A program made the translations under genes and the position numbers. From Auanema rhodensis (Eukaryota; Animalia; Nematoda), in assembly GCA_964057225.1 (NCBI GenBank), contig OZ059898.1:5580001-5644000 (forward strand): a stretch of DNA of 64,000 bases. The letters run 5' to 3'. This document shows positions 16,501-64,000 of this stretch, in pieces. The notes under the pieces are model-generated. The model was not told the origin of the DNA. It worked only from the letters and a program-made list of their open reading frames with translations, and did not search any database. Each line of letters starts with the position of its first letter. Position 1 is the first letter of the stretch.

Positions 16501-17916
16501 TATTCGTTATTAAATAGTATGCTTTCAGGTTAAAGTTATCCCTGGATTAGGAACAACTATTGATGTTATTCTGGTCAACGGAAGATTGAAGGTTTATGAT
16601 GTTCTTGTAATAACAGGACTTGACGGAGCTATAATGGCCCCAATCAGAGAGCTACTAATGCCTCAGCCGTTGAAAGAACTAAGGGTTAAGGTAAGATAAT
16701 ATTCTTTATATTAAGTTACCATGACCTTTAGAATGAGTACGAACATTTCAAAGAAGTTAAGGGTGCTCAGGGTGTTAAAATCCTAGCCAAGGGTTTGGAA
16801 AAAACAGTTGCTGGATTGCCTGTTTTCGTGGCCCATAATGAAGATGAAATTGACCTTTTGAAGTAAGAAAAATTGAATTTCTTTAAAACATGCTATGTAT
16901 TGAAGGGAAGATGCCGAGCAGCAACTCAGTAAAGCTTTAACCTCAATCAAGAAGAAAAGCGAAGGAGTGTACGTAATGGCAAGTACTCTAGGTTCCCTAG
17001 AGGCTTTATTGGAGTTTTTGCGATCACAGAAAATTCCCGTACGTATATTCATTTACCCTTTTCCAAAATTTGAAAGTTTAGTATTCGAATGTTAACATTG
17101 GTCCAGTGCATAAGAAGGATGTACAGAAAGCTGCGGCAATGAAGGAGCACAATAATGAGTACGATTCTTTAAAATTTGCGTTAATAACTTCCGATGCTTC
17201 CAGATACGCTTGTATTCTTGCATTTGACGTAAAAGTAGAGCGGGATGCTCAATTGTTTGCTGACCATGAAGGTGTTAAGATTTTCCAAGCCGACATTATT
17301 TATCACCTCGAAGACAGTTTCATGAAATATAGGTAAAATAATCATGAAAATATTTGTAAAAGCAGCACGAATTTGTGTTTAGAGAGGACCTTCGCTTAGC
17401 AGCCAGAAAAGAAAACGAACACAAAGCTATCTTCCCTTGTAAGCTTCGGATTTTGGAAAATCATATTTTCAACGCCCGTAATCCTATCATTGTTGGTGTA
17501 ATCGTTGAAGCTGGTCAATTAAAGAGGGGAACTCCCATTTGTGTTCCTACTAAAGGGGTTAGTTTTTTTCCTCTCTTGTCATTACTGTTTATTTAGCGTA
17601 TGTTTATTGGTACTGTATCGTCGGTTCAAAAAAATCACGAAGAAGTTGCTATTGCCAAAAAGGGAGAAGAAGTATGTATTAAGATTGAAAATACTACCGG
17701 TGAGGCTCCTAAACTTTTTGGACGTCACTTCCAACTGGTTGATCCCCTTGTCAGCATGGTGCGTTAATTTTTTTTGTATTTCACTATATTTTTTTAATTC
17801 TATTGAAGATATCGCGTGATTCGATTGATGCTTGCAAAAATTATTTCCGTGATGATTTGTCAACTAAAGATTGGCAATTAGTTCTCGAGTTAAAGAAAAC
17901 GTTGGATATTCTTTAA
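13516..17916 (+). CDS. iffb-1: Translation initiation factor eIF5B, multi-exon
   Basis: Lys/Glu-rich N-terminus. G-domain motifs [40 protein letters not shown] and ALNKID. C-terminal [14 protein letters not shown] and AIFPCKL; ends LKKTLDIL*. Confidence 0.96.
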
Positions 17917-18330
17917 TTTTTTTCTCGGTGCATATCTGTTTGTTTTTTGTTTTTCTTGTTGTGGGTTTTCTTGAGTGTTTTAATAAGTTCGTGGACGAAT
18001 GAATGAATTTATAATAATGTTTTTTTAATCAGAAGCACATTAAAAGTTTTTTACATAGCTTGATCCACGAATTGATTAAAGACTCAATTTTCGCACTTTT
18101 TTCTGCTTATTTTTCTTTTCATTAAAACATTAGAGATACTATTATATTTCTACAAATAAATTAAGAAGTATCTAATATAATTATTATCAGAATTCAAGTT
18201 AATAGAAAGTCTAGGCCACTGACCCGTTATTAGGACCTGTTAATGTATAAGAAAACGAATCACGAGAAGTAACACCGTTTGGGATTATTCTCCCTATCTA
18301 CTCTCAAAAATATTGTTACATAAAATGCAA

Positions 18331-21300
18331 CTAACTACCAGCTAGCTTAGATCTCACAGAAGACTGCGGCTGGGTAACATAGCCATTGTTATCTAAACGT
18401 TGACGAAGTTCTTCAACTGTTCCACTTGATGTAATTCCATATAAAGTATTTAAAGTGGGTACTGCAACTTTTTTTTTGTTCATAACATTTACAATAATGA
18501 TCATACTTGCACGAATTGTTGGTGCTGCACTGATCTGTTCCCATTGTGTCTTTAATTGAGACACAGAGGAGCTAACTTCAATATTAAAATGATTATCTAC
18601 GTGGGGTTCAAGAATGTTGACAATCTGAAAAAAAGCACTATGATTTTTCTAAAAGTAGTTTGGTACCTCTGAAAATGGTGGACGTAGGGCTGGATCAGCA
18701 TGCCACGCTTGTACTAGTAATTTTAATATGTGAGCAGGAAACTGAGCTGTAGGCCCATGTGGTAAGGAAGGTCGACCTGATTGTATCTTTATGAATTACA
18801 AAAGTTGAAAGAAACAATTACCTTGTTTGTAAGCCATTTCCGCAGCTGCAGCTGCTGGTTTCAAATGAGCAAACGGGAGTTCTGCAGAATGAATTTCCCA
18901 AACAACCAATGCGAATGAGAAAACGTCCAAACGCTGATCATAACGACCACTTTGAGAAAATACTTCAGGTGCCATCCATCGCAAATTCTTGAAAAGAAAA
19001 ATATATCTCTATAGTGTTGACTTGAACGTACACCAGGTTGTTTAGTCATGTTTTCGTGATCATTTTGCGCAGCAAAACGGCTTTCTCCAAAATCAGCTAC
19101 CACACTTCTTCCGTTACCTTGTATCAAAATATTATGACTATTCAAATCCCTACAATATAAAATAAACAGAAGCTCAATACTAACTATTCACCTATGTATA
19201 ACTGGCTCTACAGCACTGTCATGTAAATATCTCATTCCTTGTGAAACATCGTAAGATATTCGAAGTCTAAAAGCAGGCTCTAATACTCTCTTTTGCTCAT
19301 GCAGCAAACAAAATAATGATCCATTTTCAGCAAATTCTGTTATAATAGCGAATTGCTGAAAAAATAATTGGATACATAGCATATGAACAATAATTACGCT
19401 TGGATCATCTAAAGAAGCTCCTATGAAGGAAAGTATATTGGGATGAGAGAGTCGGGATAAAATAGAGACTTCACGACATAAAAGGTCAACCTCTGATTTT
19501 GATCCAAAAGCTATAGCTCGATATCTGAATAATACTAGTTTATTAAATAATGTTTTTGAACTATACCGTTTAATTGCCACAGTTCTTCCACGATAGGTAC
19601 CACGATATACTTTTCCAAATGATCCACTGCCAATAGCTTCTTGAAAATCTACATCTCCTAGATTTAGATGGTGAATTGGCTTTAATGTGCTACGAAGTTG
19701 TAATATTTCTGCTTTTTCTCTTGTGATTGAATGTAGTCGACCCATAGGTGAAGGTAACGGTGTATACGACGATTCACCGGAACTACAAATACTTTTTCTC
19801 ATTGTTGGAAGAATAGTTTGCTAACCTATATTCACTAGCTAAATCTCCATCTGCTCTTCTGTTGGCATAATGTTTTAACAGAGCGACAATCTCATCATGT
19901 CCTTTTTCGTAAGCCCATAAAATTGGTGTTTGTTGATCCTGAATTTATAAATAATCAGGAAATTAAAAAATAAACAATATTACCTCTAATGATATAGTAG
20001 AGTTATGAGAGGAAATAGAAGAAGAAGCTGGCTCGGGCCGATTCAACTGAAGAATCGCTGAAGCTACCGTAGATGGCTTAGCACATACTAAAGTTTATTT
20101 TCAAACAAATACTACATAATTTTAATACTACCATAACCGTGTGTTGCTGCAAGTGGAGTGTCTATTGCTTTAGCAGTTAATGATTGATCAGCACCATTTT
20201 CTAACAAGAATTGTACAATTCGCAAGTGCCCGTGATAACATGCGGAATGAAGAGCTAAATTTCCAAAAAAAAGTTAAGCAAACAGTGCTTGTTTTTAGAT
20301 AAACCTGTATGTCCATCTTGTCCTTGATAATTAGGATCAACGCCTGGCTGTTTCATTAATAAGTTCACAAGTTCTGCAGATTTGCCACTTGTACAAGCAG
20401 CATGTAATGGAGTTTCAGAATAAACATTTTCCTAACAATATCTGGGTAATAAAAAAACAGAAATAACTTTGTAAGATACCAGCGTTGCGACATTATAGTC
20501 CGCAGCTGATAGCAAAGCTCGGGCTACATCTGCTCGTCCTGAATAACAAGCCGAATGAAGTGGAGTATCACCATATACGTTTCTATTTATGATCATCTTA
20601 AGTTTATAAAATTACAAAAAAAATAATAAAAAGTTTTACATCAACATTGTTAAAATATTTTTTAAGCAATAAATTAACAATCTGAATATGGCCTGCCTTT
20701 GCAGCAAAATGTAACGGTAAATTGCCTTCATCATCTTCTAAGAAAGCTAAAAAAAAACAGTAAAAACAGAAGATTAGAAGTGTGTCTAACCATCGGCTCC
20801 AGATAGCAATAATAATTCAGCTATAGAAACCAGTCCACGACTGGCTGCAAGATGAAGAGGTCTATCCCGAACACCTCCAGCCCAATTAGCATCTGCTCCA
20901 TGTTCCAAAAGGCATTTAACAATCTGATTCATAATATTTGAAAGTAAATTGTAGCAATTCGTTACAAACCGGTTCATGAGCAAAATATGTAGCACAGTGT
21001 AAAGCTGTGAATTTAACGAAGTCATTAGCATGAAGAGGTGCTCCTGCATCTAACAAATGCTGAAAGAAGAAAAGGAGTTTTCTTGAAGTTTATTCTTCAA
21101 TTCCATTGACTAACTTTAACAATTAGCGGGGAACCACCCATAGCAGCCAGATGAAGTGGTGGAAGATGATGTCTCCCATCTTGTGTAGGATCAGCTCCGT
21201 GTTGTAAAAGAAATTGTACCAAAACAGGATCCATCTAAATAGGAAAAAGTAAAACATAGAAATAGTTTCATGTTCACCTTATATATAGCTAAATGTAAGG

Positions 21301-45027: not shown

Positions 45028-48000
45028 ATGAAAAGAATATTATTTGTGGCCGAGAAGAATGATGTAGCTAAAGGGGTTGCCGCCATTCTCTCGAGGGGTG
45101 AAGCTATTATTTAAAAATGCTTTTAATTTTTTGTAAGTAGGTCAAATGACAAGAAGAGAGGGCCGTTCAAAATTCAATAAGATTTACGAGCTTCATGCAA
45201 ATATATTGGGTCAAGTTTGTAGGGCTTTTGGTTTTTTTGATGAATTTGTCTAACTCAGCAAGCCCGATTATCGATAACCAGTGTGTCAGGACATTTAATG
45301 GAGTGGCAATTTGGACCAGAAATGAAAGATTGGCAGGTTTTTTCATCGGTAAAAATTTTAAAATATCTGAAGCTGAGCGTTTTAGAATGTTCCTATCGGC
45401 ACGCTATTCGAAGCCCCGATACATCACCTTGTAAATGAAAATATGAAAGCTATTGCTCAAACTTTACAGTAAGAGTAGACTAGAAGCATTTTCTGTTATA
45501 TTATGCTTACAGAGAAGAAGCTCGAAAATGTGATGTCTTAGTTATATGGACAGATTGTGATCGTGAAGGTGAGAACATCGGAGCCGAAATTGTGAAAACA
45601 TGCATGTCGACAAATAAGCATCTCGATATTTTTCGGGCGAAGTATATATATGTACAGGCTTTGCTAACCTAATATGTTTAGATTTTCTGAAATCACCCCT
45701 CAAGCAATTGAAAATGCTACAAGAAATTTAGCTAGATTAGATAAAAAAATTGCTGATGCAGTTGATTGCAGACAGGAATTAGATCTTCGAATTGGTAAAG
45801 GTTTCAACTCAATTTTTTAAGTGTTGAAATTCATTTAGGAGCTGCTTTTACAAGACTTCAAACTTTACATTTAAGGCAAAAATTTGCTCACATACTAGGA
45901 GAGAGTTCGTTTACATGTTCCTTCAAATTATTTTCATTTAATTTGCAGACAAACAAGTGATCAGTTATGGAAGTTGTCAATTCCCAACATTAGGATTTGT
46001 AGTGGAACGGTATAAAGCTATTCAAGATTTTATTACAGAAGCATTTTGGAAATTATCTGTTGAACATACGAGAGGTGGTCTTAAGGTAAGAAGGCTTTAA
46101 AGCAATTATAAAACCTTTTTTTGTAGGCTGATTTTCACTGGAACAGGAATCGTCTCTTTGATCGTGATGTTATAAATGTTTGTTCTAATTTCTAAAAGAT
46201 AGTACAAGATATGTTTTTAGGTTATATATGATGAGTGTCGTGAGGTTTCAACAGCCAAAATTGAAAAAATTGAAAAAAAGCCTAAATCTAGATATAGACC
46301 ATATGTAGAGTTTTCTTTAATATTTTTAAAATGAAATAGTTCTAGGCTCTTGATACAGTAGAAATGGAAAAGTTGGCCGTACGAAAGTTAAAGATGAGTG
46401 CTAAGACTGCGATGGGTATTGCCGAGAAACTTTATAGTAAAGGATGGATATCATATCCCAGGTTCCCTTTTTTCTATCTCACGGAACTCATTCTAATTAT
46501 AGAACTGAAACCAACAAGTTCCCTCCAGATATTAATCTACAATCATTGGTTCAGATGCAGGTACCTTCCAGTGACTGGGGGGCTTTTGCTTCAGAAGTAT
46601 GTTAATATACCATTCTTTCAAGAAATTTCAATTTTTACAGATTCTGGATAATGTGCCTTCACCACGTAATGGAAATAAAAGTGACGAAGCTCACCCTCCT
46701 ATTCACCCTTTAAAATTTGCTACGAGGTTTAACTTTATGTTCATTGACAGTTTGTTGAAACAGCTTAGTCTAGAAGTCAACTAGAAGGAAACGATTGGAG
46801 ATTATATGAACTAGTTGTCAGACATTTTTTAGCTTGTGTGTCTTGGGATGCAAAAGGATTTGAGACTAAATGCGAGGTAAGCTAATGTCATGTGCCATAT
46901 ATAAAATTTTTTTTTAGCTCAAGGTGGGCTCAGAATATTTTACTGCTACTGGTCTTCAAGTTCATGATTTAGGTTGGAAGTCAATTGGTTTTAATTTATC
47001 TCTTATTTTAAGGTTATATGAGAGTATATGTTTACGACAAATGGAGTGATAAAACCATACCTAATTACGTCGAAGGTGAGCAAATCACTGATTATTTACT
47101 TAAAATATTGGACGGGACAACTGAACCCCCACAACTTCTTAATGAAGGTATGGTTTTTTTATAAATATTATGTATGAACGAGAAATGCCCTAGCTGACTT
47201 GATTGCTCTGATGGACAAATTCGGCATAGGAACTGATGCAACACATGCTGAACATATTGAGAAAATAAAAGTTTATCAAGATTATTCTTTAATTTCAATA
47301 TTTTGTTTTCTTAGGAACGACAATATGTGGGAGTTCGCGATGATGGCCGATTCATTCCAGGTTTTCTAGGTTTAGCTCTTGTTGATGGATACGATGAAAT
47401 GGGTATTTTTTTATTTTGGCATGAATAGATTATTTAAAATAATGTTACAGGCTATGCTATGAGTAAACCTCAATTACGTGCTGACTTAGAAAGACAATTA
47501 CTGGTTATTAATAAGTTGAATAGGAAAAGCATAATCTTTGAAATTAAGGAAATTTGTGCTGGACGAAAATCCCGCCATGAAGTCATTACTGAGCAGAAAA
47601 GTAAATATAAAAGAATTTTTGAACACGCTGAAGCTCATGTTACTCTTCTCTCGTCCGCTTTATCTAAGTTGTACTTTTAGATTTTACTGGTTTTCATTAA
47701 GTACCATTTAGATACCTAAATAATAATCCTAATGCTGCTACTGCTATTGCCACTTCGGGTTCAAGTAGAGGAAGACCTACTGAAAGAGGGCGAGGTCGAG
47801 GAAGAGGTGGAACTAGAGCTCCAGAAGTCGCTCAGGTTTTTCAGAGCGTTATAATACAGTTCTACTTGCATTTTAGATTCCTAATCACAATCTCCCTCCC
47901 GCGAGGCCTAGAGGTCGGCCAAAGACAAGAGGTGCAACTACAGTACCGGCAACCGTTGGAAATGGCATGGGGAGAGGAAGAGGTATTTGTGGTTTTTAAT

Positions 48001-48206
48001 TTGATTATGGAATTAGCTGTTTAGCTGTCGTTCCTGGACAACAACCCTTGGCTTTGACAGGAGGAGCTAAGACTTGTACTTGTGGCTTGGAAGCAGTCCA
48101 AAAAACTGTAAATAAAGAAGGTTCCAACAAAGGAAGACAGTTTTGGTCTTGCCCTAAGCCTTTCGGACAGGCAGATAAATGTAATTTCTTTGAATGGGCT
48201 AATTGA
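45028..48206 (+). CDS. top-3: DNA topoisomerase III alpha, multi-exon
   Basis: TOPRIM motifs VAEKNDVAK and WTDCDREGENIG, then SYGSCQFPTLGFVV, catalytic ISYPRTET and GIGTDAT. RG-rich linker and C-terminal zf-GRF CTCG...NKGRQFWSC...CNFFEW. Confidence 0.96.
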
Positions 48207-49096: not shown

Positions 49097-52000
49097 ATGT
49101 CAGAGAATAAGGAAACTTTAATGCCTTCAGCGCCTAAAGATAACAGCATAGTTATAAATAAATTACCAATAGAAGCTTTATCAAAATATTTGCAGGTTAG
49201 CAGAAAAAAATATGTGAAAGAAAGTTTGGATTTAATAAAGGAGAAAAAAGATAGACTTCGTCAAACTATGAAAGCTATCTCAGAAAGCGAACAGGTTTCA
49301 GAATTTAAATTATACTTCTTTTATTTTTATTTACAGCCGGACCTAGAGGTAATGGGTAAACTTCTTCAAGCTTATGACACAATGACTGAGCAAGAAAATC
49401 AGTATCTAGAAGTTTTAAAAAGTATCGTGGTAAGAAGGAAAAAACGGTTATATTTAAAAACATTTCTGAAATAGATAATTCATGAACATGCTGTTGAAGA
49501 TGTTGCGCAAGATCTGGCTGCAGCAAAAGCTGAGCTAGCTGCTCAGCCTAATATAAAGCCTCCTGTAGCAAGTGAAAACCCCGCTAATGAACCAGGTTGA
49601 ATATCTATATAATACTTGATTTAATCAAATTGATATTACAGCTTCTGAAGAAGATATGAAAGAACTTCTTGATACTTTAAAAGAGATTCATGACGTTTCT
49701 AAGCAGGCTGCTTTGGCTGCTCAAATCAATGAACAATTACAGGATAAGTTGAATCTTCATAAAAACAAGGTCAGGATTCTTTTTTCTTCTCCCGCTCGGT
49801 CCCTTGAATGCTAGCAGAAAATTTATTATCTATATCCATCTTTCCGTTTTCTTTCGACTTCATTATATACTCATTCTGCGCAGCTGTTGAAACCTTATGG
49901 ATTCTTGTCTGGTCATCGTATCCTTACAAGCTATTCATGAATATATTGCGTGCAGACTTGGTTTTGTTGTCTTTTCTATTCATCTAGTTAGTTTATTTAT
50001 AATTTTGAGTGGTATAAACTCATCTAACCGATTGAAGAAACACCAATTAGGTAGCTTAATCATATAACTTATGGATATATTAACATATTTATGATATGGC
50101 CGATTAAGATTTTTAAATATAATATAACTGGTTTATATATATCGCCGTACGATCGAATTGAATTTTTTTTCTTAAAAAATAATGATGAACGTGGGGCTGA
50201 AAAGGGGCTGAAACCGTTCTTCAAGGAGATGCATCTAAAATCTCAATGAATAAAAGATTGTATAGACCCATCTGGATATAAGATGATTGGAAATAATCAT
50301 CATATGGTCAAATCCATTTAGAGAATATAACTAATAAATTGAAAAAAACTACGCTGCTCTTTAACAGAAATAAAAAGTAGCTCTCTCAGTTATGACAATA
50401 AAGTTATTTTGAATTATGTCCTGCTGCTTGTCAATTAGTTAATCAACCATATTTTCCTGAAAAAAACTCAAAATCCTTTTTTTGAAAACAGACTTATTTC
50501 AGAAAGCTGCTCTTCAAGAAATTCGCAAAGAGAAAGCTGAGGCGTTACAAAAAAAAGCAAACGAAACACTGACAGCGGTTGAAATGACCAAAATAAAGTG
50601 TAAGCTAACTTTCTCAATAAAATTGATGAAAACTAATATTATTTAAGTGGACAATGAAAAGCAAGCTAAAAAACAAAAAGAAAAGGAATTGGAACGTCTT
50701 CGTAAAACAGCCCTTCAAAAGGGAATTGAATTGGGAGTAGTTGAGGAAAATATGGTAAAATATAATAGAAAACTTCATTTTCAACTATAATGGTTGCTCA
50801 GAAAGACGCAGCCATTAAAGCTATATCTGATTTAACTTCTGATGCTCAACGGATTCCTCCCACTATGGGAGAAACTGAAGAAGAACGAGAAGAGAAGGTA
50901 GTTTTTTATTTATTTTTATTGAATAGAATTTTTGACAAATGATGTGTTGTGAGAGGATTTTCAATTTTACAGATTTATGAGTTTGTTGTGAATGGTTTAC
51001 TTGAGCAACAGATGGCTTATATAAATGAGAATTTTCCATCAGAACCTCAACTTGAAATGTTTAATCACTGTAGATATTGTTAGAAAACTAGAAAACATGC
51101 ACAAACAAGCTATTACATCGATATATCCACATAATTTACATTAACATATAAAATCAAATAAATACTTTTTTTTTCTAATTTTTTGCAAATTTTCAGCCTT
51201 CATTAACAAAAGAAGAACAAATGGAAGAACGCCGAAAGGAGATTCGAGAAAATATTAAAAAAGAACGCGAACGGTACGTTAATTTTTCATCCTCTAGAAT
51301 GCTTCAATGTTTTTTGTCTGAAATATTTTAAAGCATTTCGAAAATATTTTATTATGATATTAAATATCTATGTGTCCCTCAATACATATATGAGAACAAA
51401 GAAAAATCTAAATATAATACAAATTGTACTGAGTTGTGCTTTGCGGTCAGCTGTTCTCCGTAGTCAGACAAGTAAGAAGTGAGGATTAACAACATGGCTA
51501 TGATCTGCTGACCTGCTTTAAACTATAGTTTAAGACTTTGGCACAATACGTCAAATAAGTTAAAGAAGGCAAATTTTGATATATTTGGATAGATATTCTT
51601 AACAATATCTGTACATCTCCATATATCACACAAATCTTTTTGTGAGCAATATATCATATTTTAATGGTTTAATTTTTATAATAAGCTTTTCAATATAATA
51701 TATCGTATTACCTTAATGAAATCGTAACCAATTTCAATATGCAGTTAGAACGAAAACGGATACTTTAGTAAAATCTTCTTCCCGAATTTTCTTTTCATCT
51801 TCAGCTTCAAAGAAATTATTTCGTCCTAACCTGTTCTAATGACCAACTGTTCAGGGTCCGAGTTTTGCACCTTATCGATGTATCAATTTACCTTCTTATG
51901 GATAAACATAAGAGAAACAATAATGATTAATAATCTGCGAAATTGAGAGTAGAAGTTAAAGTAACCTTTGAAACCCTTAATTTTAGAATATCGTACTTGG

Positions 52001-55000
52001 ATATTTTAATCACATTTTATTAAATAACTTCTGCTGTAATTGAAGTCAAGTTTAAGAAGTTCAAAATGAGTTGCATTCTTGAAATTCTTTGTTTTGATAA
52101 CATGTTCAAACATTTTTGATGAAATATTTTTGTTTCGAAAATGAACCAACTTGGTTTCAGTATGAAGAAGATTTTCTAGAAGAGTGATGTTGAAACGAGG
52201 ACACATCATCAACATTAAGAAAAGATGAAGAGTCTAGAGTGAGAAAAAGTATATGACACTATGTATATTTAAGAGAGAGAAAGAAAACGACCGAGTGAGA
52301 AAGCAAGATATTCTGAGTCAAATGAGAAAAAGCTTTCTTGTTTTAAGAATTTATTCGATCAATAGGAAATATTCCTTGTTACAAAAATAATTTCAATTTC
52401 ATTTATGTGTTTTCTTTATCATATCTGTATATTGGCCTGAATTTAAAAATATTTAGAATTTATATTTTAGAAAAGAACTAGTAAACCAACAGATTCGAGA
52501 AAAACTTAAAGCTGTTGAAGCCCGCAAGGATCGTATTAGGCAATTAAGAGAAATGCTTGAAATTAGTCGTTAGTTATTTTTAGAATTTTAGTTTTTCTAT
52601 TTTCATTGTAGTTTTTGAAAAAAAACAATTAATTCTCGTGTAAAACAATAATTTTACAGACAAACATGCGCTTGCAGAACAAGCTGAGCAAGATGCTCAA
52701 CAGCAAGCACAGGAACATGCTGAGCAACAAAATGAGAAACCCGCAGAGGAACAGGTTAAGCAACAAGCTGAAAAGAAGACATCGAATGATTTGGAGAAGG
52801 ATGATCATAAAGAAGAAGAATTGCATTCACTTGACCGTCAAATATCATCTGACATTCATGATGATATGACAGAAGAAGAACTTCGAGAATATGAACGAAC
52901 AGAGAAAGAATTGAGTGAAACAATACGAAACGCCACCTTCAATCTTCAGTAAGAACTTTTTTTCTTTAAAATTCCTTGGCAAAAATATTGGGTGTGATGA
53001 ACAAAAAAAAACTATTTATAAGAAACATTGTTCATTTGTTTTTTACTTCATTCTTCATTAATTTTATTGATGAAGGCTCAAAAAATAGTAAAACAGTTGC
53101 TTCTTAGTTTTTTTTCAACCAGTTTTCATTTCATGATTAGTAACCTTGCTCAATAACTTTGTATCTAAATCTAAATTATTCTATAAAACTAATTATAAAA
53201 ATATGAGACACTGGGATGATTTAAGAATGTAAGTTGCTTTTGTTGTTTTAATTATGCATATTAACTATATCATTTTAATTTTTGTGATTCATCAGTGCAA
53301 CTGTTCTTTATTTAATATCCATTTTCTTGAAAAGAACACATACACGTGAAATATCTTGGTTAATTATTCTTTTGTTACTTTATAGTTCAGTTGTAAAAGA
53401 AGCAGCCAATTTAATTATACTAATATCGTATTATATAATATTAAATTTCATTTTGTTTCAGGAACTTAACATTAATGCGAATGCGTTTGGAAGATATGCA
53501 AGCTCGGGGTGAAAGTATTTCTGAAGAAGATGCTCAGCTCATAGATCGCTTAGATAATCATGGTGGAAATGAACAATCTTCCGAAGCCATTGAAGACCAG
53601 GCGCCTCCAGTTCCTACATCGTCACCTCCATCAGCATCCTTAGAGAAGGAGGTTTGTAGAAGTATAACACGTTTCTAAGCTTGATTATTGTGTGTCTAGT
53701 TTCTATTTTCTATTTCTATGTGGAGCATGTATGAGTTTGTTTATGTCTTCAAGATTTTTAAGAAAATATACTTTGTTTTTTAAACAAAAACAGTTTTTTT
53801 TTGTTTCAAGCATTATAGATTTTTTTTAAATTCGAATACTATTTAGTGCATGTTCATTAATGATGTGATGATTGCTGTGATTATTAATATTAAGTAATAT
53901 GTTATATACCTATTTTTCAATATTTTCTAACAATATCTTACATATAATTCGATAATAATCTGATATACGGGCTTGTATATTGAATTCATTTATATTTTTC
54001 TTGAATATACGAATGTCTTTTCATATTCAGAAGTTATTGCATGAGTAAAATGGTGTCTCCCAGTTGTAAGCAAATTTGAAATTTTTTTGAAGATTTTCAA
54101 TTAGGTGTGGTGAAACAAATATGTTTGATTATGAGGAATATATAAAAGGCTGAAAGGAGAGAATGAAAGACAGAAGAGATAAAATGATGAAAAGAGACAT
54201 CAGGAGAGTATACAACGAGAGTTAGAGAGAATCAAGGAGTAGTGTGATGGAAAATGAGAAAATAGAAAGGAAAGAACGAGCATATAAGAGATTCTACTTA
54301 GCATTAACATATAATAACCATTTATACCACCTGTTGGTTAATGTTTAGAGATAGTGAAGTCAGCCGAAGTATTATTAATAATTGTGGTTGCCTTAGCTTT
54401 ATGGATGCAAAGATCATCTCGAAATATGGCTTAGACACTAGTTGTCATGGTGATAATCAGCTGGCGTACATTCATGTAAGTAAAGAGAAGAGAAATGAAA
54501 GAAATGCGTAAGAAATACTATCAGCTGAATTTATAAGCTATAGTAGCTATATGAGAATTAAGAATTAAAAAAGATTATTTTAATCCATGCTTATAACTTT
54601 TTCGATAAAATTATTTCAATAATTACTTCGGAAATAGACTAGTTTCTTCCTTTTAGTTAGAAATGATTAAAAACTCATTATATATAACTTTTAACTATTT
54701 AAGTAACACAATTAGAAAATATACCTAAATTACTCTTAAAAATCTATTGTGATATCAGGTTGAAGATTCCTGAGATTCCTGCAAGTTTCAACGATTGCAT
54801 AATCGCTTGTATTAAAAATATCATTGAAAGAGTTTGTATTTCTTTGCTGTTTTACTATTAACTCTCTCATTCTTTCCCTCATTTTGCCTTCCAATTTTCA
54901 TCTCTCAATATCTTTTCATTTATAATTGTGTATCTCTTTTAGTCATGAAATGACTCGCTTATTTCCATATAGAGTAATTGTAGTCATCGTTCGCAGAGAA

Positions 55001-58000
55001 AACAAGAAAAAATTCACAAATAAAAGCGATCTAATTAAAATTCTAACCAGCGGAATGTGTTTAGATTATGGTTGCTATTTTGAGACTTCATTCCTTATAC
55101 CAAGTTTTATTTCATAGAAAATAATGATAACATACATATATGAGGAAATGTATTTTTCAAAATCAAAATGATCCGCATTAACTATGATACAAGATCAGAA
55201 ATGCGGCTTCTATATTTCAAATACAAGAAAGTTGAAGAAACGAAAAAATATTAGTGTGTTAGTGAGAAGAAGTCAATTTGGAAGAAAAAAATGTAGGAGC
55301 GCTTACTAAAATCTCCTCTTCTCCAGTTTTCTCAACTTAGATATCTATAAATAGAGAAGCACATAAGCTTGCTTCGGCTTACATGCTATCAACAGCATTC
55401 AATATGAATGAAGTAAGCGATCATGTCGATCATCAACTTTATAAAACGAAAATACATTCTTTAATGCTTAATAATGAAGCCTTTTACTAATATTTATAAT
55501 TAAAATGTAATTTCATCATAAATATGAGTGAATCGGAAACAAATGCACAACATCTGGCTACGTGCGTGAAGTCGAAGAAGATGGAAAAACGAAACGAGCC
55601 TGCTTTTACTCATTGATGAGTGGTAGAGGAGGAAGAACCCAGTACAGATGTGCCTGAATTGAATTGAACTTGCAATTGTCCCTCCATCTTGCCTTTGATT
55701 AGTTTCATTGTGAGCTTTCAACTAATTTTCATTGTGAAGATTAAAATTGTAATCGTTTTTTCAAGTCCTATCTAATGTGAATGTCCAAAATTGTCTATTT
55801 TCTTAAACAAAAATAACAATACTACTAGGATATAAAGTTCAATTATAAAGATTTATGAATTACAGATCGAGGATGTCGTCCGTGAACAGTTTACATCAGT
55901 ATTCAAAAAACCAGCTACAAGTGCTAGATCTAATGTAGCCTGTTGTTCCTGCCATGAAAATTATAATTTTTCAACAACAGCGACAAGACTGAATCGCATG
56001 GAACATTTATTTCGTCAACAAATGGATGATGTACGCCATATCAAGGAAATGGTAACTTTCTTACGTTCTTTTTCCTATAAATATTCTGAAAATATCTGAG
56101 TCGAAGAGTCTCTGTTTCTGTATGTTGAGGAAGCTCGGTTGTGTATGTATTGCTGAGATAAGAAGCAAATGGAATTTTCTATCTTTTTTAGCTCATCCAA
56201 CACGATGAAGGAGACTTCCATGTCTTCTGGTCACCTCTTCACTCACTCTGCTATTACATTAGGGCAACGGAAATGACAATTCCGACATCTGCACAAGCTG
56301 TCGGATTCCGTTTACTCAGCCATCCAATATTTTCTTTGATGCTGCTACATTAATTGGGAAAATTTGAGATTTTCTTTGGTTTCGTAAGAGTTGAGACACT
56401 AGCCTATATCATGGCATGCTAGGCATTTCGTCTATTGTTGCAAAACTTTTCGTCTCTCCGTTAGCTTTTATTCGGAAATAAAACAATATTTTTGGTAAAA
56501 AATGTGGAAGAATTTGACGAAAAGGAGAAGTTTTCGAAAAGACTCTTCAAAACATTAGCATATGCTTGAGCATGTAGATCATAGCATCAATGTTTATAAA
56601 AACATTTTATAAACATAATTCCACTTTTCATTTGGGCTTTTAGCAAAAAAATCAAAAAAAAAAGATCGATAGTTTGAAGAACCTGAGGAAGGGTTGATCT
56701 TTATATTATATATTATATTAAGTCTTTTATTATTTTCTCAATCCACTTTATGCATTTTTATACTATTATTCCTTTTTTTTCTACTTTTTTTCTGCAAATC
56801 TTAATTAACAAAAAAAACTTTATTACTCTATGCAACTGGCCGCCAGATGTTTCTTATTGCTTTTCAACTTCTTACTCATCTAATGTTCTTTTATGAATAT
56901 ACCGTCGAAATCTTCTGATGTCTGGCGGCCAACTCAACTATGATTCTTTTGATAATACCGACGAAGAACCATACCCCCTGCTCTGCGTTCAACTCACTTC
57001 ATTATTTTTCGGTGCTCTCTGTTCGTCCAATGCGCACGAGGCTTTTGTAACCAGCACATTAATTCCGTTTTTTCAACAGATATTTGCAATCAAATCTTAC
57101 TCAGTTTAAACAAGAAACTGCCTTAATTTCCATAGGTGACAGATGGATTAACTTTAGGAGATCTGATATATCGATTAGAGGGCGGGGCCATAAGGTGGGT
57201 GGAGAAGCTGAGCTGTGAGCTGAAGTAGGCGGGACGAGGGGCACATCAGCAGCAGCAGCAGCAGCAGTCGTTCTGCCAAGTCTCTGGTCGTCATCAGTGG
57301 TGTCCACTTCATCAGTACACTCATTTATTTACACTTCTACGTACTACTACTGCCCATCTTCGTTCTTGTCATCCATATTTTCCCAATTCCAATCACAGTC
57401 TTATCCATCCTTCCCAAAATCTATATAGCAATAGCTAGTACATAGACATCAGATTTTGAATAATTCAACCTTATGGCGAGGACCATGATGTATTCAAGTC
57501 AGCCATTTCAATCAAACCCCATGTTTGGATTTAAACCTGTTCACATACTCAAAAGATATTTCTAAGTAGTTTTGCCACTTGGAACTTCGGCAGTAGCTTT
57601 GATGACGTATGCTAAGTTTCAAAGTCGATTCATAAGTGGATATAGAAGGGACGGCTGTCTCGTCCAGCTTATTCATAAGACATTCGAGTTGCTACTGCAT
57701 TTGATATAAGCTTCTGAAAATAGTCGTTGTGTGTATGTGTCTCTGATGCCTTCAGGCGGTTTAGTGTGGTCATGACGAGCGGTCATGCCTCGAGGCTGGT
57801 GGAGTCGGCAGCACGAGTGTGCTCTCTGTGCAAGAGCCTTTTCAGTCTTTTTCCCGGAAATCAATGTGCTGTCTGCCCGGCTGAATTGCCTCCATTGACA
57901 GCACGACAACGAACTGGCAGGCAACCGGACATCTTACATAAACGACAAAACAATAGCATCATCATATATCCTGTGAAAATGTTCAGCTAATCTCAAGTAA

Positions 58001-60791
58001 CATAGACGATGTTTTGATTGTCAAATTAGCACAACAAACTCACCATTATTAAAGATTAAATAGATAATTAGCTATAAGTTATCCGTTAACTATATGCATA
58101 TTGTATATAGTATATCTATTTAAATAGAAGCATTTTATCAATGTACAGCACATTCCCTGTTTCTTTTTAGTCATCTGTTCAGGACCTTTTCACTACTAGT
58201 TACAACCATGTTCATTCTATTTCATCGTCATGTCTCTCTGCTCGTAATAATGTCGCAACCATGCTGGTTGCTCTGTTTCGTTCTGGGCATTTGACACAAC
58301 CAACAGACGTGCCTATGTCTAAATCTATATCGATAATATATTGCTTAGAAAAAACATTGTAAAGGTGTTTGATACAACATCAAATGTATTGTTTCTATTG
58401 GTATTCCATAGCTATATTTATAGTTATAAAAAGACAAAACAATCTAAAAGAATTGATGTATTCCCAAAAGTAGAAAGATACCTTTTCAATTATCTATTAA
58501 TCACACCATCATCATAAATTCTAGCTTATAATGTCATTGAGAACGTGTTTATGGACGTTTGTGATGTGAGAACTTCATACGTTTTGAAAGCTTATCCATA
58601 TTTCTATATTCAAAATCCTATATACGTTTCTGTTTGTAAAAATTGTGAACTAGTGTTCTCTAATAACATGACTACCTATCGCAATACTACATCAGATTCG
58701 TTTTTTCATTTGCTCCTGTTTCAATTCAGTTCTTCAACCCCCTTGTCTTCTATCTTTGATCAGCATACAAGACATACCGAGTCAGGCTACAGATAATAAA
58801 TATGATATAAACCATATTGAATGTTCCCTTAACTATTCAACTTCAAATTATCTAGATATGTCCCACTGCTTCTAATCTATCCATTACTAAATCGGCTTTA
58901 CTTCGTGCTTCATCCAGCTTGCTTGGCTCTCTGGCTGATGTGCTGAGCCAGATGGCAGTTGGGCAGCATACAGCTGCTCGCGAATTAGACAGCCTTTTGA
59001 ATCAACTTTATCAGGCTGATTATACTGTATCTAACAACTCATTACATCATCAGGTACGTTAATTAAAATATGTGTTGTGTCTTCACTCATTTGAAATTTG
59101 TTTTCTCATAACTTTTGTTTTTACTATTACTTTTAATATAAAGTATATATCTAAATGAATAAACATCTAGATATACATTTCAGAGATCTTTGTAGATATA
59201 ACATATTTTCATTTATTATATTTTCATTTTTTTTTAAATTTCAAATAAAAAAATAGAAATTAATAAACTTTTTTCTTTTTCATTCTGTCGTGTCTGTGTC
59301 TGTTAGTTTGCTTTTTGTGTATGTCAGTGTGATATTTCTTAATTTTTCTAATTTTTTAAAAATTTTTTTCCTTGCAAAAATTTTTTTTATAAATTTTCAC
59401 TTCGTAAGTACAGCGCCTCGCCAGTTAAGTGAATGCTTTGCCACAGTCTTAGAAGTAGTAAGCTGGGCTTAGGTTCGCTTAGGCTGGAGAGAGTGGCATT
59501 ACCGTATTCACACACGGCTTCTCTGATGATCAGAGATTTAATTTAAATTATTTCAAATAGATAAAAGCAATGAGTTATAAACTATCAAAAGTTATTAAAT
59601 AAACTAAACCGGGAAATAAAGCCATTATTTATTATCGAATATTTCATTACCAGTACTTCTTTATTTCCATATTCATGCTTAACTATTTTTTATAGTTCAG
59701 ATTTCATTGTATGTATATAAGTATTGGGATATATATGAAATTTTACGAATTTTTCTGCTTCTGCCTTCATTTTAACCTCTTTTTCATTTTGCTCTCCATC
59801 TGCTTATTTTGGGGCGGGCATCGATTGCTTTCCTGACCACCACGGAGCTACACATGATACCAGGCAGTGTCTCCAGTTGAGGAGCAGCGCGTAATTCAGT
59901 TTTTAATTTCCTCTTAGGCTGTTTGTGGGTTTTATTGACGAAAGAGCCAGGCGCTTCATCGTCTTCACTAGACGTTATCGCCAACTTAAAAGTTTTATTT
60001 ATTTATATATTACATATATGTATAAGAAATGTATTATACAAAATATATATGTGTAAATATAATAAGGTTGGAGAAAAAAAAGAAGATATAATCTATTTAT
60101 ATTAATTAATATAATTAATATATTATTTGATTAATACTTCTCTTTCTTTATTTATTCTTTTTCAAGTTTTTTTTTGAAAAAATACTCATAATAATCATTC
60201 ATAGTTTATTATAAAAATAAAACATCTTGATAAGTGAAGAGATTTTAAAATATAAATATTTTAAAATTAGTTGAAATACTAAAGCAACCGATCTTTGTTT
60301 TCAATTTATTTGAAATGAAAAAAAAAAGAAGAATAGTGCCGTTTCCTCTACAAAATATTTCAGTTAAAATGAAATGTCCATGTATAGGACATTTAATGAT
60401 TATTCCATATGAAGTTCAAATCTTTTTGAATCAGAAACTAGGGGATTACAACAAAGTTTAATAATGTTTTCATGGTTATACAGATTTTTATGAAAATAAG
60501 GTGTTTCACTGCCCGCTGTTGACCCTTCAAAGTAACCATAAATTTAATTTTAGAAAAAGTAAAAACAGGACTTTCAACATTTTTCTATCTAAGTTTAAAT
60601 TTTTGTGTCTTAAGGTTTCAATGCTTCAAAACGTATATAAGAATGTTCACTATATTGTTTTAAAAGGAAGAAAAATAATTTAATTTGTGAACTACAGAGG
60701 AAAGGCAATTATGGATTCTGAAAGTTGGCATGTCAGAATTCTCGTTCTATATTCATCTGTATAGCACATACACATACATACATATGTACAT

Positions 60792-60857
<66 letters not shown>

Positions 60858-63360
60858 TTATTATAAAAAACATTTTTTGGAAAAAAAAGTAACTCATTGA
60901 TTCCATTTCTACAGTATTTTACAGCTTATAAGTTATATGCTTATACATGTATGACAATGAATATTTAATGTTAGTTTTAAAGTATTTTTTCGATTAAGAT
61001 GGCTCCAATGAAAACGAAAAAAAAGTTTTTCTTTTTGATATGTAAACTTTGAAGATGAATTAGATATATAATATGATTTTCGAGGTTTCTTTTTGAAAGA
61101 CCCATGTTTAGCTCAGCTTTGACTGTTTCCATGGCAATAATTTTCATGCAAAATCTCGGACGAGAATGCATACCAAAAGAAATATATGAAAAAACTTGAC
61201 TTAAACGAATTTTAAGAGTAAAGATAAAAAATATATGCTGATTGTTATAGATAATTGAATGATATTAGCATATAATCTGAAATATATGTATGAGTAGAAT
61301 ATATGTCTATTTGTTATAAAAATTTATTATTTTTATTCTTCCAATACAATATGTGGAATACTGCAATTAATTCTAAAAAAAGAGACTTCATGTAACATTT
61401 GTGATGATCGATAGATGTCACAAATATTTTCATATAAACGAAGTGTTGTCAGTTGGAAGACAAAAATGCAAATCAAAGACAAAGATTGAATAACTACAAT
61501 ATGGCTCTAACAATTGGCATTTCTTTATTAATATTTCAATAATAATATACTTAATTTATTTTTTTAGTTTTTTAAATATAAATATATACATAATATTGTA
61601 TAATTAGAATCAAATTTATATTTACAGGCCTTAAACTCTGATGTTCATATGGGATTTGAAGATGTTATAGCAAATCCACAGGTATGTTCAACTGTTCATA
61701 AACTATTCGATTTTTAAACACGATATGTGTAGAAAATATTTCGAAATTGTGCAAGTGTTTGAAGAGAACCGTTGATGGCTTTCTACTATCGACAGTTGTT
61801 TTACGTCAAATGATGTTCTTCATCTACCCCAAAGACGCTAATACATATTTTCGGTGGAAGAGGGAAGGGGGCCCGAGAAGTATAGCAAAGAGAGATGAGT
61901 TGAGAAGAGGATTTCATTCAGATGTTGTAATAGAGAACATATTGGACTATCATTCGAATTTCAATTTCAGAATTAACCAGATGCTTACACTCAGGTCAAT
62001 GTATTCGAAAAAATGAAATTTATTTTATTTTAAGCGGAAGAAAGATTTTCATGACCAGGCTATTCTGAGAGGTCATTGAAAGTTTAAAAAAAGGAAATGG
62101 AATGAATAGAAAGAAAGAGCTGCAAGCAAGACGTAGAAAAAATAAGTTTTAGATGGCTCAGCTTCTATCATCCTCATCTGATTAGTTTACTCTATTGAAT
62201 TTTACTTTTCATTCTCTAATGAGCTTAATATGGATATCAAAAGAATAATCTGACTTAGAAGGGCTCATATGAAAGAAGAAAAGAATTTGTATGTTGGCAG
62301 TTGGTAGAGATAATAGAGGAGAAACGAGAACAAGCAAAGAGGATTGTGGGGGGGGGGCAAGAGGAAGGGGGCATTTCGATAGAATAATTTGAAGAATTTT
62401 TTTGGTTTCATACTGAATACTAAATGAAAAACATTTAGAATGAAACTGAATATTCAATGATTACTATTATGTTACAAAACAGATTTTTGTCACTGAGTAG
62501 ACTATATTTTGAAATAAAAAAAGTTATTTTTATTGAAATATTTATTATTCTTTATTGTATTTCATAGACTAAAACTACATTTCATATTCATAACGAACTA
62601 TATAGCTTGCTTCGTTGCCATGGTAAATTCTCTCACTCATCAGCCTAAAGAGAAAAAGATTAATCTCAAACTTAAATAAGTGAATGAACAAGATTTTCAA
62701 TTAGGAGCTGCAAGAAATAATTAATTCAATTTCTAGTCTTAACGTTAAAAAAAGAACAATTGATAGTGGTATTATACATATATCTAAATATAGCTATGTG
62801 GTTTTGAAACAAGAAAAAAACGTTTATTTTCTCAGCAAAATATTTTTTTTAATATTTCAGGCATATGATTACTCAGAAGAAATAAGCCAACATCAAAATT
62901 CTAAGCGTGATAATCAATCTCCTACACTTGTGAAACAGAAAACAATCGAAAGTGTTCGATTTGTGATTGAACCTACAGAAATTGAAGATAATGTTGAATA
63001 TAGAAGTCCCTCGACTTCTGAAATATCGGGATCTTCAACTTCGGAACGGCTATCGTGTTCACCTACAGCTGCCGGCGGATTTGCACATCCTATTGTTGGA
63101 TATCAAGCTGCATCTGGTGGCAGTGGAATGACTTCAACTGAATCTGTAGAATCGAATGGTATATGGATGAAGCAGATTAACTCAGAAGCAGATGTAGTAC
63201 CTGTTAATAACCAAACTGAAGTGGTCAATGAGCCAGAACGAGAAAATGAAATATCTAAAACGGAAAATGAGCATTTACAGAATATTGTTCGAACTATCAT
63301 TCAGATTTTGTCATCACAATTTCAATGTGCCACTGTACTTACACTTGACATAGGTAACAG
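49097..63360 (+). CDS. Large coiled-coil protein, candidate divergent PCM1-like; mir-86 host gene; 3'-incomplete in this window
   Basis: Approximate exons: 49097-49293, 49337-49429, 49474-49595, 49642-49769, 50503-50598, 50648-50754, 50802-50897, 51197-51273, 52471-52568, 52659-52948, 53462-53651, 55866-56051, 58856-59053, 61628-61681, 62861-63360. The junctions I checked are in phase and no terminal stop is reached. Gene existence is well supported; PCM1 identity is tentative. Confidence 0.7.
54441..54454 (-). promoter_or_regulatory. X-box (RFX/DAF-19 site) ATCACCATGACAAC
   Basis: Plus strand GTTGTCATGGTGAT; fits RTHNYY-WT-RRNRAC. Confidence 0.5.
57165..57330 (+). promoter_or_regulatory. 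GC-rich intronic island with GC boxes and (CAG)6, possible internal promoter
   Basis: GAGGGCGGGGC, GGTGGGTGG and AGGCGGGAC, followed by a CAG repeat, in an otherwise AT-rich intron. Confidence 0.4.
59418..59490 (+). ncRNA. mir-86: microRNA mir-86 precursor hairpin (mature 5p at 59426-59448)
   Basis: TAAGTGAATGCTTTGCCACAGTC matches recalled C. elegans miR-86-5p exactly. Complementary 3' arm GCTGGGCTTAGGTTCGCTTAGGC at 59462-59484. Intronic and on the sense strand of the host. Confidence 0.93.
60765..60859. repeat. Compound (CATA)n/(TA)n/poly-T microsatellite
   Basis: Directly visible. Confidence 0.9.
61125..61138 (-). promoter_or_regulatory. X-box (RFX/DAF-19 site) ATTGCCATGGAAAC
   Basis: Plus strand GTTTCCATGGCAAT; a strong consensus match. 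Confidence 0.55.
62614..62627 (+). promoter_or_regulatory. Near-consensus X-box GTTGCCATGGTAAA
   Basis: One terminal mismatch; about 235 bp upstream of exon 62861. Confidence 0.4.
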
Positions 63361-64000
63361 GTATGTGCTTCTTTATTTTTTAAAAAAGAAAATTCTTTTA
63401 GTGTAATTCTTAAAATAAGGGGTTTCGAAATTTTACATACCATTTGCTCTATCAACGTGTAATTATAAATGTTTTCGAATAACAACCTTCCCATCTAGCA
63501 GTTTCTTTTTCCTTTCTATATTACAAAAAAAATACTTTTGAGATTCAATCACGAGGGGTTAAAGGTAACCCAAATGAACAGTTGTTGCGTTGATAGAATA
63601 GTCACAAAAGTAAAAGATGTAGGAAAGATGAAAATCTTTTACGAGAAACAAAAAGGCCAGCAGCCGTCTCTCTGCAATTACAATAAGTGAGAGAGAAAGG
63701 CTGAAGATAGAGACAAGAAAAAGCAACAGTTGACGTTTTGGAGATTAGGCGACGAATAAGACCGGATAGATGAGAAAACAGCTTCCTTTTCATTTCGCAT
63801 ACAATTGCTCAACCAAATACTTCTCTATAGTTGAGAAAAAGGGATAATGAATGGGAAAAAAGGGAGTAAGGGAGTGGGGAAGTAGACAATTCCGATAACA
63901 TTTCCAAGTAAAAATTTTTTTTCCAAAAAAAAAGAAAGTTTTATAGTAAATCCTATAACATTCTCAATTTTTAGCTTGCGAGACCTCATAGTAGCATTAG

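What the first reader, a model, noticed from the sequence alone, without database searches (positions are those of the whole stretch)
49097..63360. Candidate divergent nematode PCM1 (centriolar satellite scaffold)
Seen: three collinear coiled-coil segments. (a) VKESLDLIKEKKDRLRQTMKAI...MGKLLQAYDTMTEQENQYLEVLKSIV; (b) EKLKAVEARKDRIRQLREML; (c) EHLFRQQMDDVRHIKEMI. By eye they resemble recalled human PCM1 segments (a) IVSRLVQIRDYITK...ERLTHLIDHLKEQEKSYMKFLKKIL, (b) KLNEVRKRLNELRELV and (c) TQLTWQQNNVQRLKQML, in the same order. Known: nematodes were long considered to lack PCM1 and centriolar satellites; I recall a divergent fly ortholog (Combover) being proposed. Inference: this is a hidden PCM1 ortholog. 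Coiled coils can match by chance.
Basis: inference. Interest (0 to 1): 0.75.

Follow-up and report, generated by a model that had tools for sequence, protein, structure and literature searches.

The report
Roundworm PCM1-family gene, already published
This is an intact roundworm gene for a long helical protein that ends in a short PCM1-type tail; it is the counterpart of C. elegans Y56A3A.7, which was already listed as the worm PCM1 in 2014 and 2025, so the reading is right but not new.

Summary
The three segments are real. They lie in one + strand gene of 15 (perhaps 16) exons and about 867 codons, starting at the ATG at 49097. The last exon runs 197 bases past the window end. The gene is collinear over its whole length with a 926-aa Auanema protein.

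The last exon is the only place in the 181 Mb genome that matches Pfam PCM1_C (21 bits, below the 27.4 cut-off). It links by profile comparison (97.4%, E 1.6e-11) to filarial proteins that pass the cut-off at 45 bits.

Two position markers tie the gene to C. elegans Y56A3A.7: mir-86 in sense in an intron, and topoisomerase III directly upstream.

Kuhn et al. 2014 and Pachinger et al. 2025 already list Y56A3A.7 and Brugia Bm10731 as PCM1 orthologs, and UniProt names the hookworm relatives for the domain. It is therefore already known, though uncharacterised and still overlooked in some papers.

The claimed resemblance of the N-terminal segments to human PCM1 could not be tested, and the N-terminus alone does not retrieve PCM1.

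This scan also holds a first-reader note on the same domain, from the overlapping window of the same genome.

The parts
49097..49294 (+). Exon 1 with the start codon; holds the first half of reader segment (a). It may be split by an in-frame 45-nt intron at 49151-49195.
   Evidence: tblastn with Auanema P0001; splice sites; sequence read. Removing 49151-49195 improves the fit to the orthologues.
49337..49429 (+). Exon 2; second half of segment (a)
49475..49595 (+). Exon 3
49642..49769 (+). Exon 4
50503..50599 (+). Exon 5
50648..50754 (+). Exon 6
50802..50897 (+). Exon 7; holds the conserved RIPP motif, which sits in a predicted linker
51197..51273 (+). Exon 8; start of the invariant IRENxxKERER block
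52471..52568 (+). Exon 9; reader segment (b). This is the most conserved N-terminal motif among rhabditid orthologues.
52660..52948 (+). Exon 10; acidic, poorly conserved stretch. An alternative acceptor lies at 52678.
53462..53651 (+). Exon 11
55866..56051 (+). Exon 12; reader segment (c). An alternative acceptor lies at 55851.
58856..59053 (+). Exon 13; 82% identical to Auanema
59418..59490 (+). mir-86 precursor, in sense inside intron 13
   Evidence: Rfam RF00808, 83.5 bits against a gathering score of 64, E 2e-19. It lies at the same place in the Auanema and C. auriculariae orthologues.
62861..63360 (+). Exon 14; low-complexity middle. Its tail starts the PCM1_C-like region.
   Evidence: The Auanema piece that spans this junction matches PCM1_C positions 195-314.
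63975..64000 (+). Exon 15, the last. It continues 197 bases past the window end, to G000:C6:5644197 (L005:1503-1725), followed by TAA and AATAAA. It encodes 74 residues, a three-helix core of PCM1_C.

Best explanation
The locus is an intact protein-coding gene of 15 or 16 exons and about 852-867 codons. It is the orthologue of C. elegans Y56A3A.7 and Brugia Bm10731, the divergent nematode member of the PCM1 (centriolar-satellite scaffold) family.

Shown here: the exon structure, the long N-terminal helices, a 74-residue three-helix C-terminal exon homologous to the conserved core of Pfam PCM1_C, a single copy in the genome, and conserved neighbours.

Inferred from vertebrate PCM1 and fly Combover, and not shown here: the helices self-associate, so the protein scaffolds cytoplasmic granules that gather centrosomal and ciliary proteins (or their mRNAs while they are translated), and the C-terminal core is a conserved docking or regulatory module.
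For: - A whole-genome six-frame scan with PF15717 finds one hit, the last exon.
- That exon has PCM1_C as its only Pfam match: 21.3 bits, E 1.3e-4, model positions 266-316.
- All 9 nematode C-terminal pieces match PCM1_C, best E 1.3e-14.
- The filarial Elaeophora protein passes the curated cut-off, at 45 bits against 27.4.
- phmmer of the exon against 1.84 billion proteins gives only nematode relatives, including that filarial cluster at E 3.5e-4.
- BLASTP of the exon against the filarial protein gives E 1e-12.
- hhalign of the rhabditid profile against the filarial proteins gives 97.4%, E 1.6e-11.
- The gene is collinear over its full length with the Auanema 926-aa protein.
- The exons make an open frame of 867 codons with in-phase GT-AG junctions.
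- UniRef names the hookworm orthologues 'Pericentriolar material 1 protein C-terminal domain-containing protein'.
- mir-86 lies in sense in an intron here, in Auanema and in C. auriculariae, as published for Y56A3A.7 and its H. contortus homologue (PMC2835999, PMC3282659).
- TOP3 lies directly upstream in all three genomes.
- The literature equates PCM1 with Y56A3A.7 and Bm10731.
- The three nearest named clusters to the whole orthologue in the ESM Atlas are all PCM1; at scores of 0.76-0.78 this is a lead only.
Against: - The window's own exon stays below Pfam's gathering score, and only about 50-120 of the 628 model positions are matched.
- No non-nematode protein reached E 1e-3 in the one exhaustive search.
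- The N-terminal third alone does not point to PCM1, and its likeness to human PCM1 was not tested.
- The protein is less than half the length of human PCM1 (2024 aa; PMC11839937).
- No C-terminal-domain exon was detectable in the C. auriculariae locus.
Confidence: 0.82

Rival explanations
1. A nematode-specific coiled-coil protein that shares only a short three-helix module with PCM1. The sharing would be by domain-level homology or exon shuffling, without descent of the whole gene from PCM1 and without satellite-scaffold function.
For: The similarity is confined to about 60-120 residues and is sub-threshold for rhabditids. The N-terminus gives no PCM1 signal. The protein is less than half the size of PCM1. 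The C. elegans reporter is not neuronal. SAS-1/SSNA-1 satellites are described in C. elegans without reference to any PCM1.
Against: The architecture matches PCM1 and Combover: long N-terminal coiled coils, a disordered middle, and the conserved core at the C-terminus. It is the single PCM1_C locus in the genome. Two independent published orthology analyses reached PCM1. In insects too the homology is largely restricted to the C-terminus.
Confidence: 0.13
2. The PCM1 likeness is chance similarity between helical, low-complexity sequences.
For: The direct Pfam score is 21 bits, and the genome-wide E-value is 0.05. The structure search of the 74-residue model returns unrelated helical hairpins.
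Against: PCM1_C is the only family hit for 9 of 9 independent nematode pieces, always at the same model positions (266-319), and two pieces pass the curated cut-off. hhalign gives E 1.6e-11. The matched exon is not coiled-coil-like in composition.
Confidence: 0.03
3. A decayed or unexpressed gene copy.
Against: The frame is open across all exons with in-phase splice sites, a stop codon and a poly(A) signal. Protein identity to Auanema is 49-82% in the best-conserved exons and 31-43% in the rest, and the gene is single-copy in a conserved neighbourhood.
Confidence: 0.02

Closest known systems
C. elegans Y56A3A.7 and Brugia malayi Bm10731 (putative nematode PCM1 orthologues; Kuhn et al. 2014, Pachinger et al. 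2025)
   Same: It hosts mir-86 in sense in an intron and sits next to topoisomerase III. Orthologues in Auanema, hookworms, Heterorhabditis and C. auriculariae are collinear with it.
   Different: The C. elegans and Brugia proteins themselves were not retrieved here, so orthology rests on position markers and intermediates. In C. auriculariae no C-terminal PCM1_C-like exon was found, whereas this gene has a clear one.
Vertebrate PCM1 (2024 aa, centriolar-satellite scaffold; Pfam PF15717 PCM1_C)
   Same: The order of parts is the same: N-terminal coiled coils, a disordered middle and a conserved C-terminal core. The last exon matches PCM1_C model positions 266-316, and the Auanema piece spanning the last two exons matches 195-314.
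   Different: It is about 860 aa against 2024. Only about a fifth of the PCM1_C model is present. The protein ends right after the conserved helices, so the stretch that follows the core in human PCM1 and carries the LIR motif at 1953-1958 has no counterpart. N-terminal homology is unproven.
Drosophila Combover (CG10732)
   Same: It is also a highly divergent PCM1 orthologue, recognisable mainly by the C-terminal core and found through intermediates.
   Different: Combover has been characterised (foci, ciliary and fertility phenotypes, translation-related interactome). The nematode protein is uncharacterised.

Membership tests
PCM1 family (Pfam PF15717 PCM1_C) | A match to PCM1_C at or above Pfam's gathering score (27.4 bits) | tested here: inconclusive
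   The window's last exon scores 21.3 bits (E 1.3e-4) and PCM1_C is its only family match. The genome-wide scan finds this locus alone, at 18.2 bits, E 0.05. The joined last two exons were not scored, because the spliced model was not joined.
PCM1 family (Pfam PF15717 PCM1_C) | Significant homology to proteins that do pass the PCM1_C cut-off | tested here: met
   The filarial P0005 and P0003 score 45-46 bits. The exon against P0005 gives BLASTP E 1e-12. phmmer gives E 3.5e-4 in a library of 1.84 billion proteins. hhalign gives 97.4%, E 1.6e-11.
PCM1 family | N-terminal coiled-coil regions that self-associate | tested here: inconclusive
   Four long helices are predicted in the orthologue's first 340 residues. 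The homodimer prediction gave no verdict. No PCM1 N-terminal profile or sequence was available for comparison.
PCM1 family | Reciprocal best match to PCM1 outside nematodes | not testable with these tools
   Forward direction: PF15717 hits only this locus. Reverse direction: no non-nematode protein reached E 1e-3, and the word-based searches were swamped by coiled-coil words. The published reciprocal BLAST and HMM analysis reports it for Y56A3A.7 and Bm10731.
Orthologue of C. elegans Y56A3A.7 | Hosts mir-86 in sense in an intron | tested here: met
   RF00808 at 59418-59490, 83.5 bits. The same holds in Auanema and C. auriculariae. Published for C. elegans and H. contortus.
Orthologue of C. elegans Y56A3A.7 | Conserved neighbours (topoisomerase III upstream) | tested here: met
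   A GRF zinc-finger exon lies at 48000-48203. TOP3 lies directly upstream in Auanema and C. auriculariae. The Heterorhabditis gene model fuses TOP3 with this gene. That C. elegans top-3 also carries a Y56A3A clone name is from my memory and was not checked.
Centriolar-satellite scaffold (function) | Forms cytoplasmic granules that hold centrosomal or ciliary proteins | not testable with these tools
   This needs tagging and imaging. Nothing is published for any nematode, and Pachinger et al. call the C. elegans orthologue uncharacterised.

The most novel reading that the evidence does not exclude
The Y56A3A.7-family protein is the missing PCM1-type scaffold of the SAS-1/SSNA-1 satellite-like foci recently described in C. 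elegans, which their authors believe form without any PCM1 homologue. A related possibility is that a conserved X-box-like element in intron 13 (61125-61138, with a counterpart in Auanema) gives ciliated neurons their own transcript of the C-terminal exons.
Probability: 0.15. Interest if true: 0.6.

Novelty: already known. Interest (0 to 1): 0.25.

Why it matters
The identification is correct but published. PCM1 = CG10732 = Y56A3A.7 has stood in Kuhn et al. since 2014 and was confirmed in 2025, and UniProt already names the hookworm orthologues for the domain.

Its remaining value is practical. A 2024 review and a 2026 preprint still state that C. elegans has no PCM1, and the nematode protein is uncharacterised. 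A clean gene model from a species that keeps a clear C-terminal core, together with the mir-86 and TOP3 position markers, makes the orthologue easy to trace across nematodes. It also points to a simple experiment in C. elegans: tag and delete Y56A3A.7, then look at the SAS-1/SSNA-1 foci.

Tried and rejected
- Pfam on every N-terminal exon and on the full-length orthologues gave nothing above noise. Full-length scoring hides the C-terminal hit, which appears when the piece is cut out.
- The three word-based protein searches returned only the same eight rhabditid proteins, or the query itself; candidates were swamped by coiled-coil words. So the C. elegans, Brugia and non-nematode PCM1 sequences were never retrieved.
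- Exon 14's tail alone gave no Pfam hit.
- The Atlas structure search with the 74-residue model returned only unrelated short helical proteins and was uninformative.
- The homodimer prediction for residues 120-330 of the orthologue gave no verdict: no support, and no evidence against.
- My heptad-versus-shuffle test was not decisive.
- The exact X-box consensus has no match in the window, and none lies in the promoter even with one mismatch.
- The conserved block at 59848-59965 does not fold better than shuffles.
- tblastn found no C-terminal-domain exon in the C. auriculariae locus.
- The exons were never joined into one protein for any search or fold. Each was used by reference, with the Auanema protein as a full-length proxy.
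Full report
**What is there.** The window is G000:C6:5580001-5644000 of a 181 Mb AT-rich roundworm genome. Splice-site and phase arithmetic gives 15 exons from the ATG at 49097. The last exon starts at 63975 and ends 197 bases beyond the window, followed by TAA and AATAAA. The exons total 2601 nt, or 867 codons, with no internal stop and every junction in phase. Exon 1 may hold one more in-frame 45-nt intron (49151-49195); removing it improves the fit to orthologues.

Each exon was used by reference, and the Auanema orthologue served as the full-length proxy. 

**Relatives.** I searched the 74-residue last exon with phmmer against 1.84 billion representative proteins. It found a 926-aa protein of Auanema sp. 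JU1783 (68% identity, E 6e-23) and three short nematode fragments. One fragment is from Ancylostoma duodenale. Another shares a 90% cluster with Elaeophora elaphi A0A0R3RJN5, named 'PCM1_C domain-containing protein'.

The Auanema protein aligns to the window exon by exon over its whole length, at 31-82% identity. Word-based searches added hookworm, Heterorhabditis and Caenorhabditis auriculariae orthologues. UniRef names the hookworm ones 'Pericentriolar material 1 protein C-terminal domain-containing protein'.

**The PCM1 test.** None of the N-terminal exons hits any Pfam family. A six-frame scan of the whole genome with PF15717 (PCM1_C) finds a single place, the last exon (18.2 bits). As a protein, that exon has PCM1_C as its only match: 21.3 bits, E 1.3e-4, model positions 266-316. 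This is below the 27.4-bit cut-off.

- All nine nematode C-terminal pieces match PCM1_C at the same model positions, with a best E of 1.3e-14.
- The filarial proteins pass the cut-off at 45-46 bits.
- The Auanema piece that spans the last two exons matches model positions 195-314.
- The window exon aligns to the filarial protein at E 1e-12.
- A rhabditid profile aligns to the filarial proteins with 97.4% probability, E 1.6e-11.

So the C-terminal core is homologous to PCM1_C through an intermediate that is a curated-threshold member. AlphaFold folds the exon as three helices (pLDDT 87). A structure search with so short a model was uninformative.

**The N-terminus.** A model of the orthologue's first 340 residues shows four long helices separated by disordered linkers, so 'coiled-coil segments' is a fair description. 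Segment (b) lies in the most conserved block of the family, the invariant IRENxxKERER...EARK run, so it is more than generic coiled coil.

I could not obtain any non-nematode PCM1 sequence, so the claimed likeness to human PCM1 segments remains untested. In the Atlas feature search the whole orthologue's three nearest named clusters are all PCM1 (scores 0.76-0.78, a lead only). The N-terminal 340 residues alone give unrelated families. The PCM1 signal therefore sits in the C-terminal part.

**Orthology to the published worm gene.** Rfam finds mir-86 at 59418-59490, in sense inside intron 13 (83.5 bits). It is also inside the Auanema and C. auriculariae orthologues. mir-86 is known to lie in an intron of C. 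elegans Y56A3A.7 and of its Haemonchus homologue (PMC2835999, PMC3282659).

A topoisomerase III gene lies directly upstream here (GRF finger at 48000-48203) and in both other genomes. A Heterorhabditis gene model even fuses the two genes.

**What is known.**
- Kuhn et al. 2014 list PCM1 = CG10732 = Y56A3A.7 (PMC4046923, Tables S1 and S3).
- Pachinger et al. 2025 confirm this by reciprocal BLAST and HMMs, list Bm10731 and Y56A3A.7, and call the C. elegans gene uncharacterised (PMC12094185).
- A 2024 review and a 2026 preprint still say C. elegans lacks PCM1.

**Function.** By analogy with PCM1 and Combover, the helices would self-associate to scaffold cytoplasmic granules linked to centrosomal and ciliary proteins. 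This is inference only.

- A dimer prediction gave no verdict.
- The C. elegans promoter reporter is not neuronal.
- The protein is less than half the length of PCM1.
- Caenorhabditis may have lost or strongly changed the C-terminal core.

**Verdict.** This is a correct, well-supported orthologue call of a known but neglected family. Interest is low to moderate.

Noticed in passing
window 61125-61138 (also 62614-62627); L006:20683-20696: Two near-consensus X-box-like palindromes, each with one mismatch at the last base, lie in intron 13 between mir-86 and exon 14. The one at 61125 has a counterpart in the same intron of Auanema with similar flanks: 33 of 48 bases identical around the motif, against 18-24 for the other pairs. 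By count alone, one-mismatch sites are common (25 seen against about 15 expected in the window). This may be a conserved regulatory element, or chance.
   Followed up: partly
window 59418-59490: mir-86 precursor in sense in intron 13, 96% identical to Auanema over 94 bases. The host-gene linkage was known for C. elegans and H. contortus. Here it is also seen in this genome, in Auanema and in C. auriculariae.
   Followed up: yes
window 59848-59965: A 121-base block 88% identical to Auanema lies 350 bases downstream of mir-86 in the same intron. It does not fold better than shuffles on the + strand. A 66-codon ORF overlaps it on the - strand (59784-59984). Its nature is unknown.
   Followed up: partly
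window 56819-57896: Several blocks in intron 12 are 75-83% identical to the matching Auanema intron (56819-56860, 57127-57327, 57742-57808, 57828-57896). They lie in the most G+C-rich part of the gene region. There is no Rfam match and no annotated gene in Auanema. They may be a nested RNA gene or conserved regulatory DNA.
   Followed up: no
L006:20930-20989 (Auanema): The Auanema gene model has a 20-codon exon between the counterparts of exons 13 and 14. No counterpart was found in the window. Either way the frame stays open, so only RNA data can tell.
   Followed up: partly
L007 (C. auriculariae), 16000-20000: No exon resembling the PCM1_C core could be found downstream of mir-86 in the C. 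auriculariae orthologue, and its annotated protein ends differently. The core may be lost or very diverged in Caenorhabditis, or the gene model may be wrong.
   Followed up: partly
P0012 (Heterorhabditis), P0014 (Necator): Public gene models fuse this gene with its neighbours: topoisomerase III upstream and dolichol kinase downstream. These are most likely annotation merges, but they record the conserved gene order.
   Followed up: partly
window 48000-48203; L002:450-2000 (- strand); L003:5200-10000 (- strand): The neighbours are the last exon of a topoisomerase III gene (GRF zinc finger, 57.9 bits), an armadillo-repeat gene converging on the 3' end, and further on a collagen with long Gly-X-Y runs and a cysteine-rich end, which looks like type IV.
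   Followed up: partly
window 60720-60900: A TA/CA-rich simple repeat gives sub-threshold Rfam matches to mir-297, mir-466 and similar families. These are composition artefacts.
   Followed up: yes
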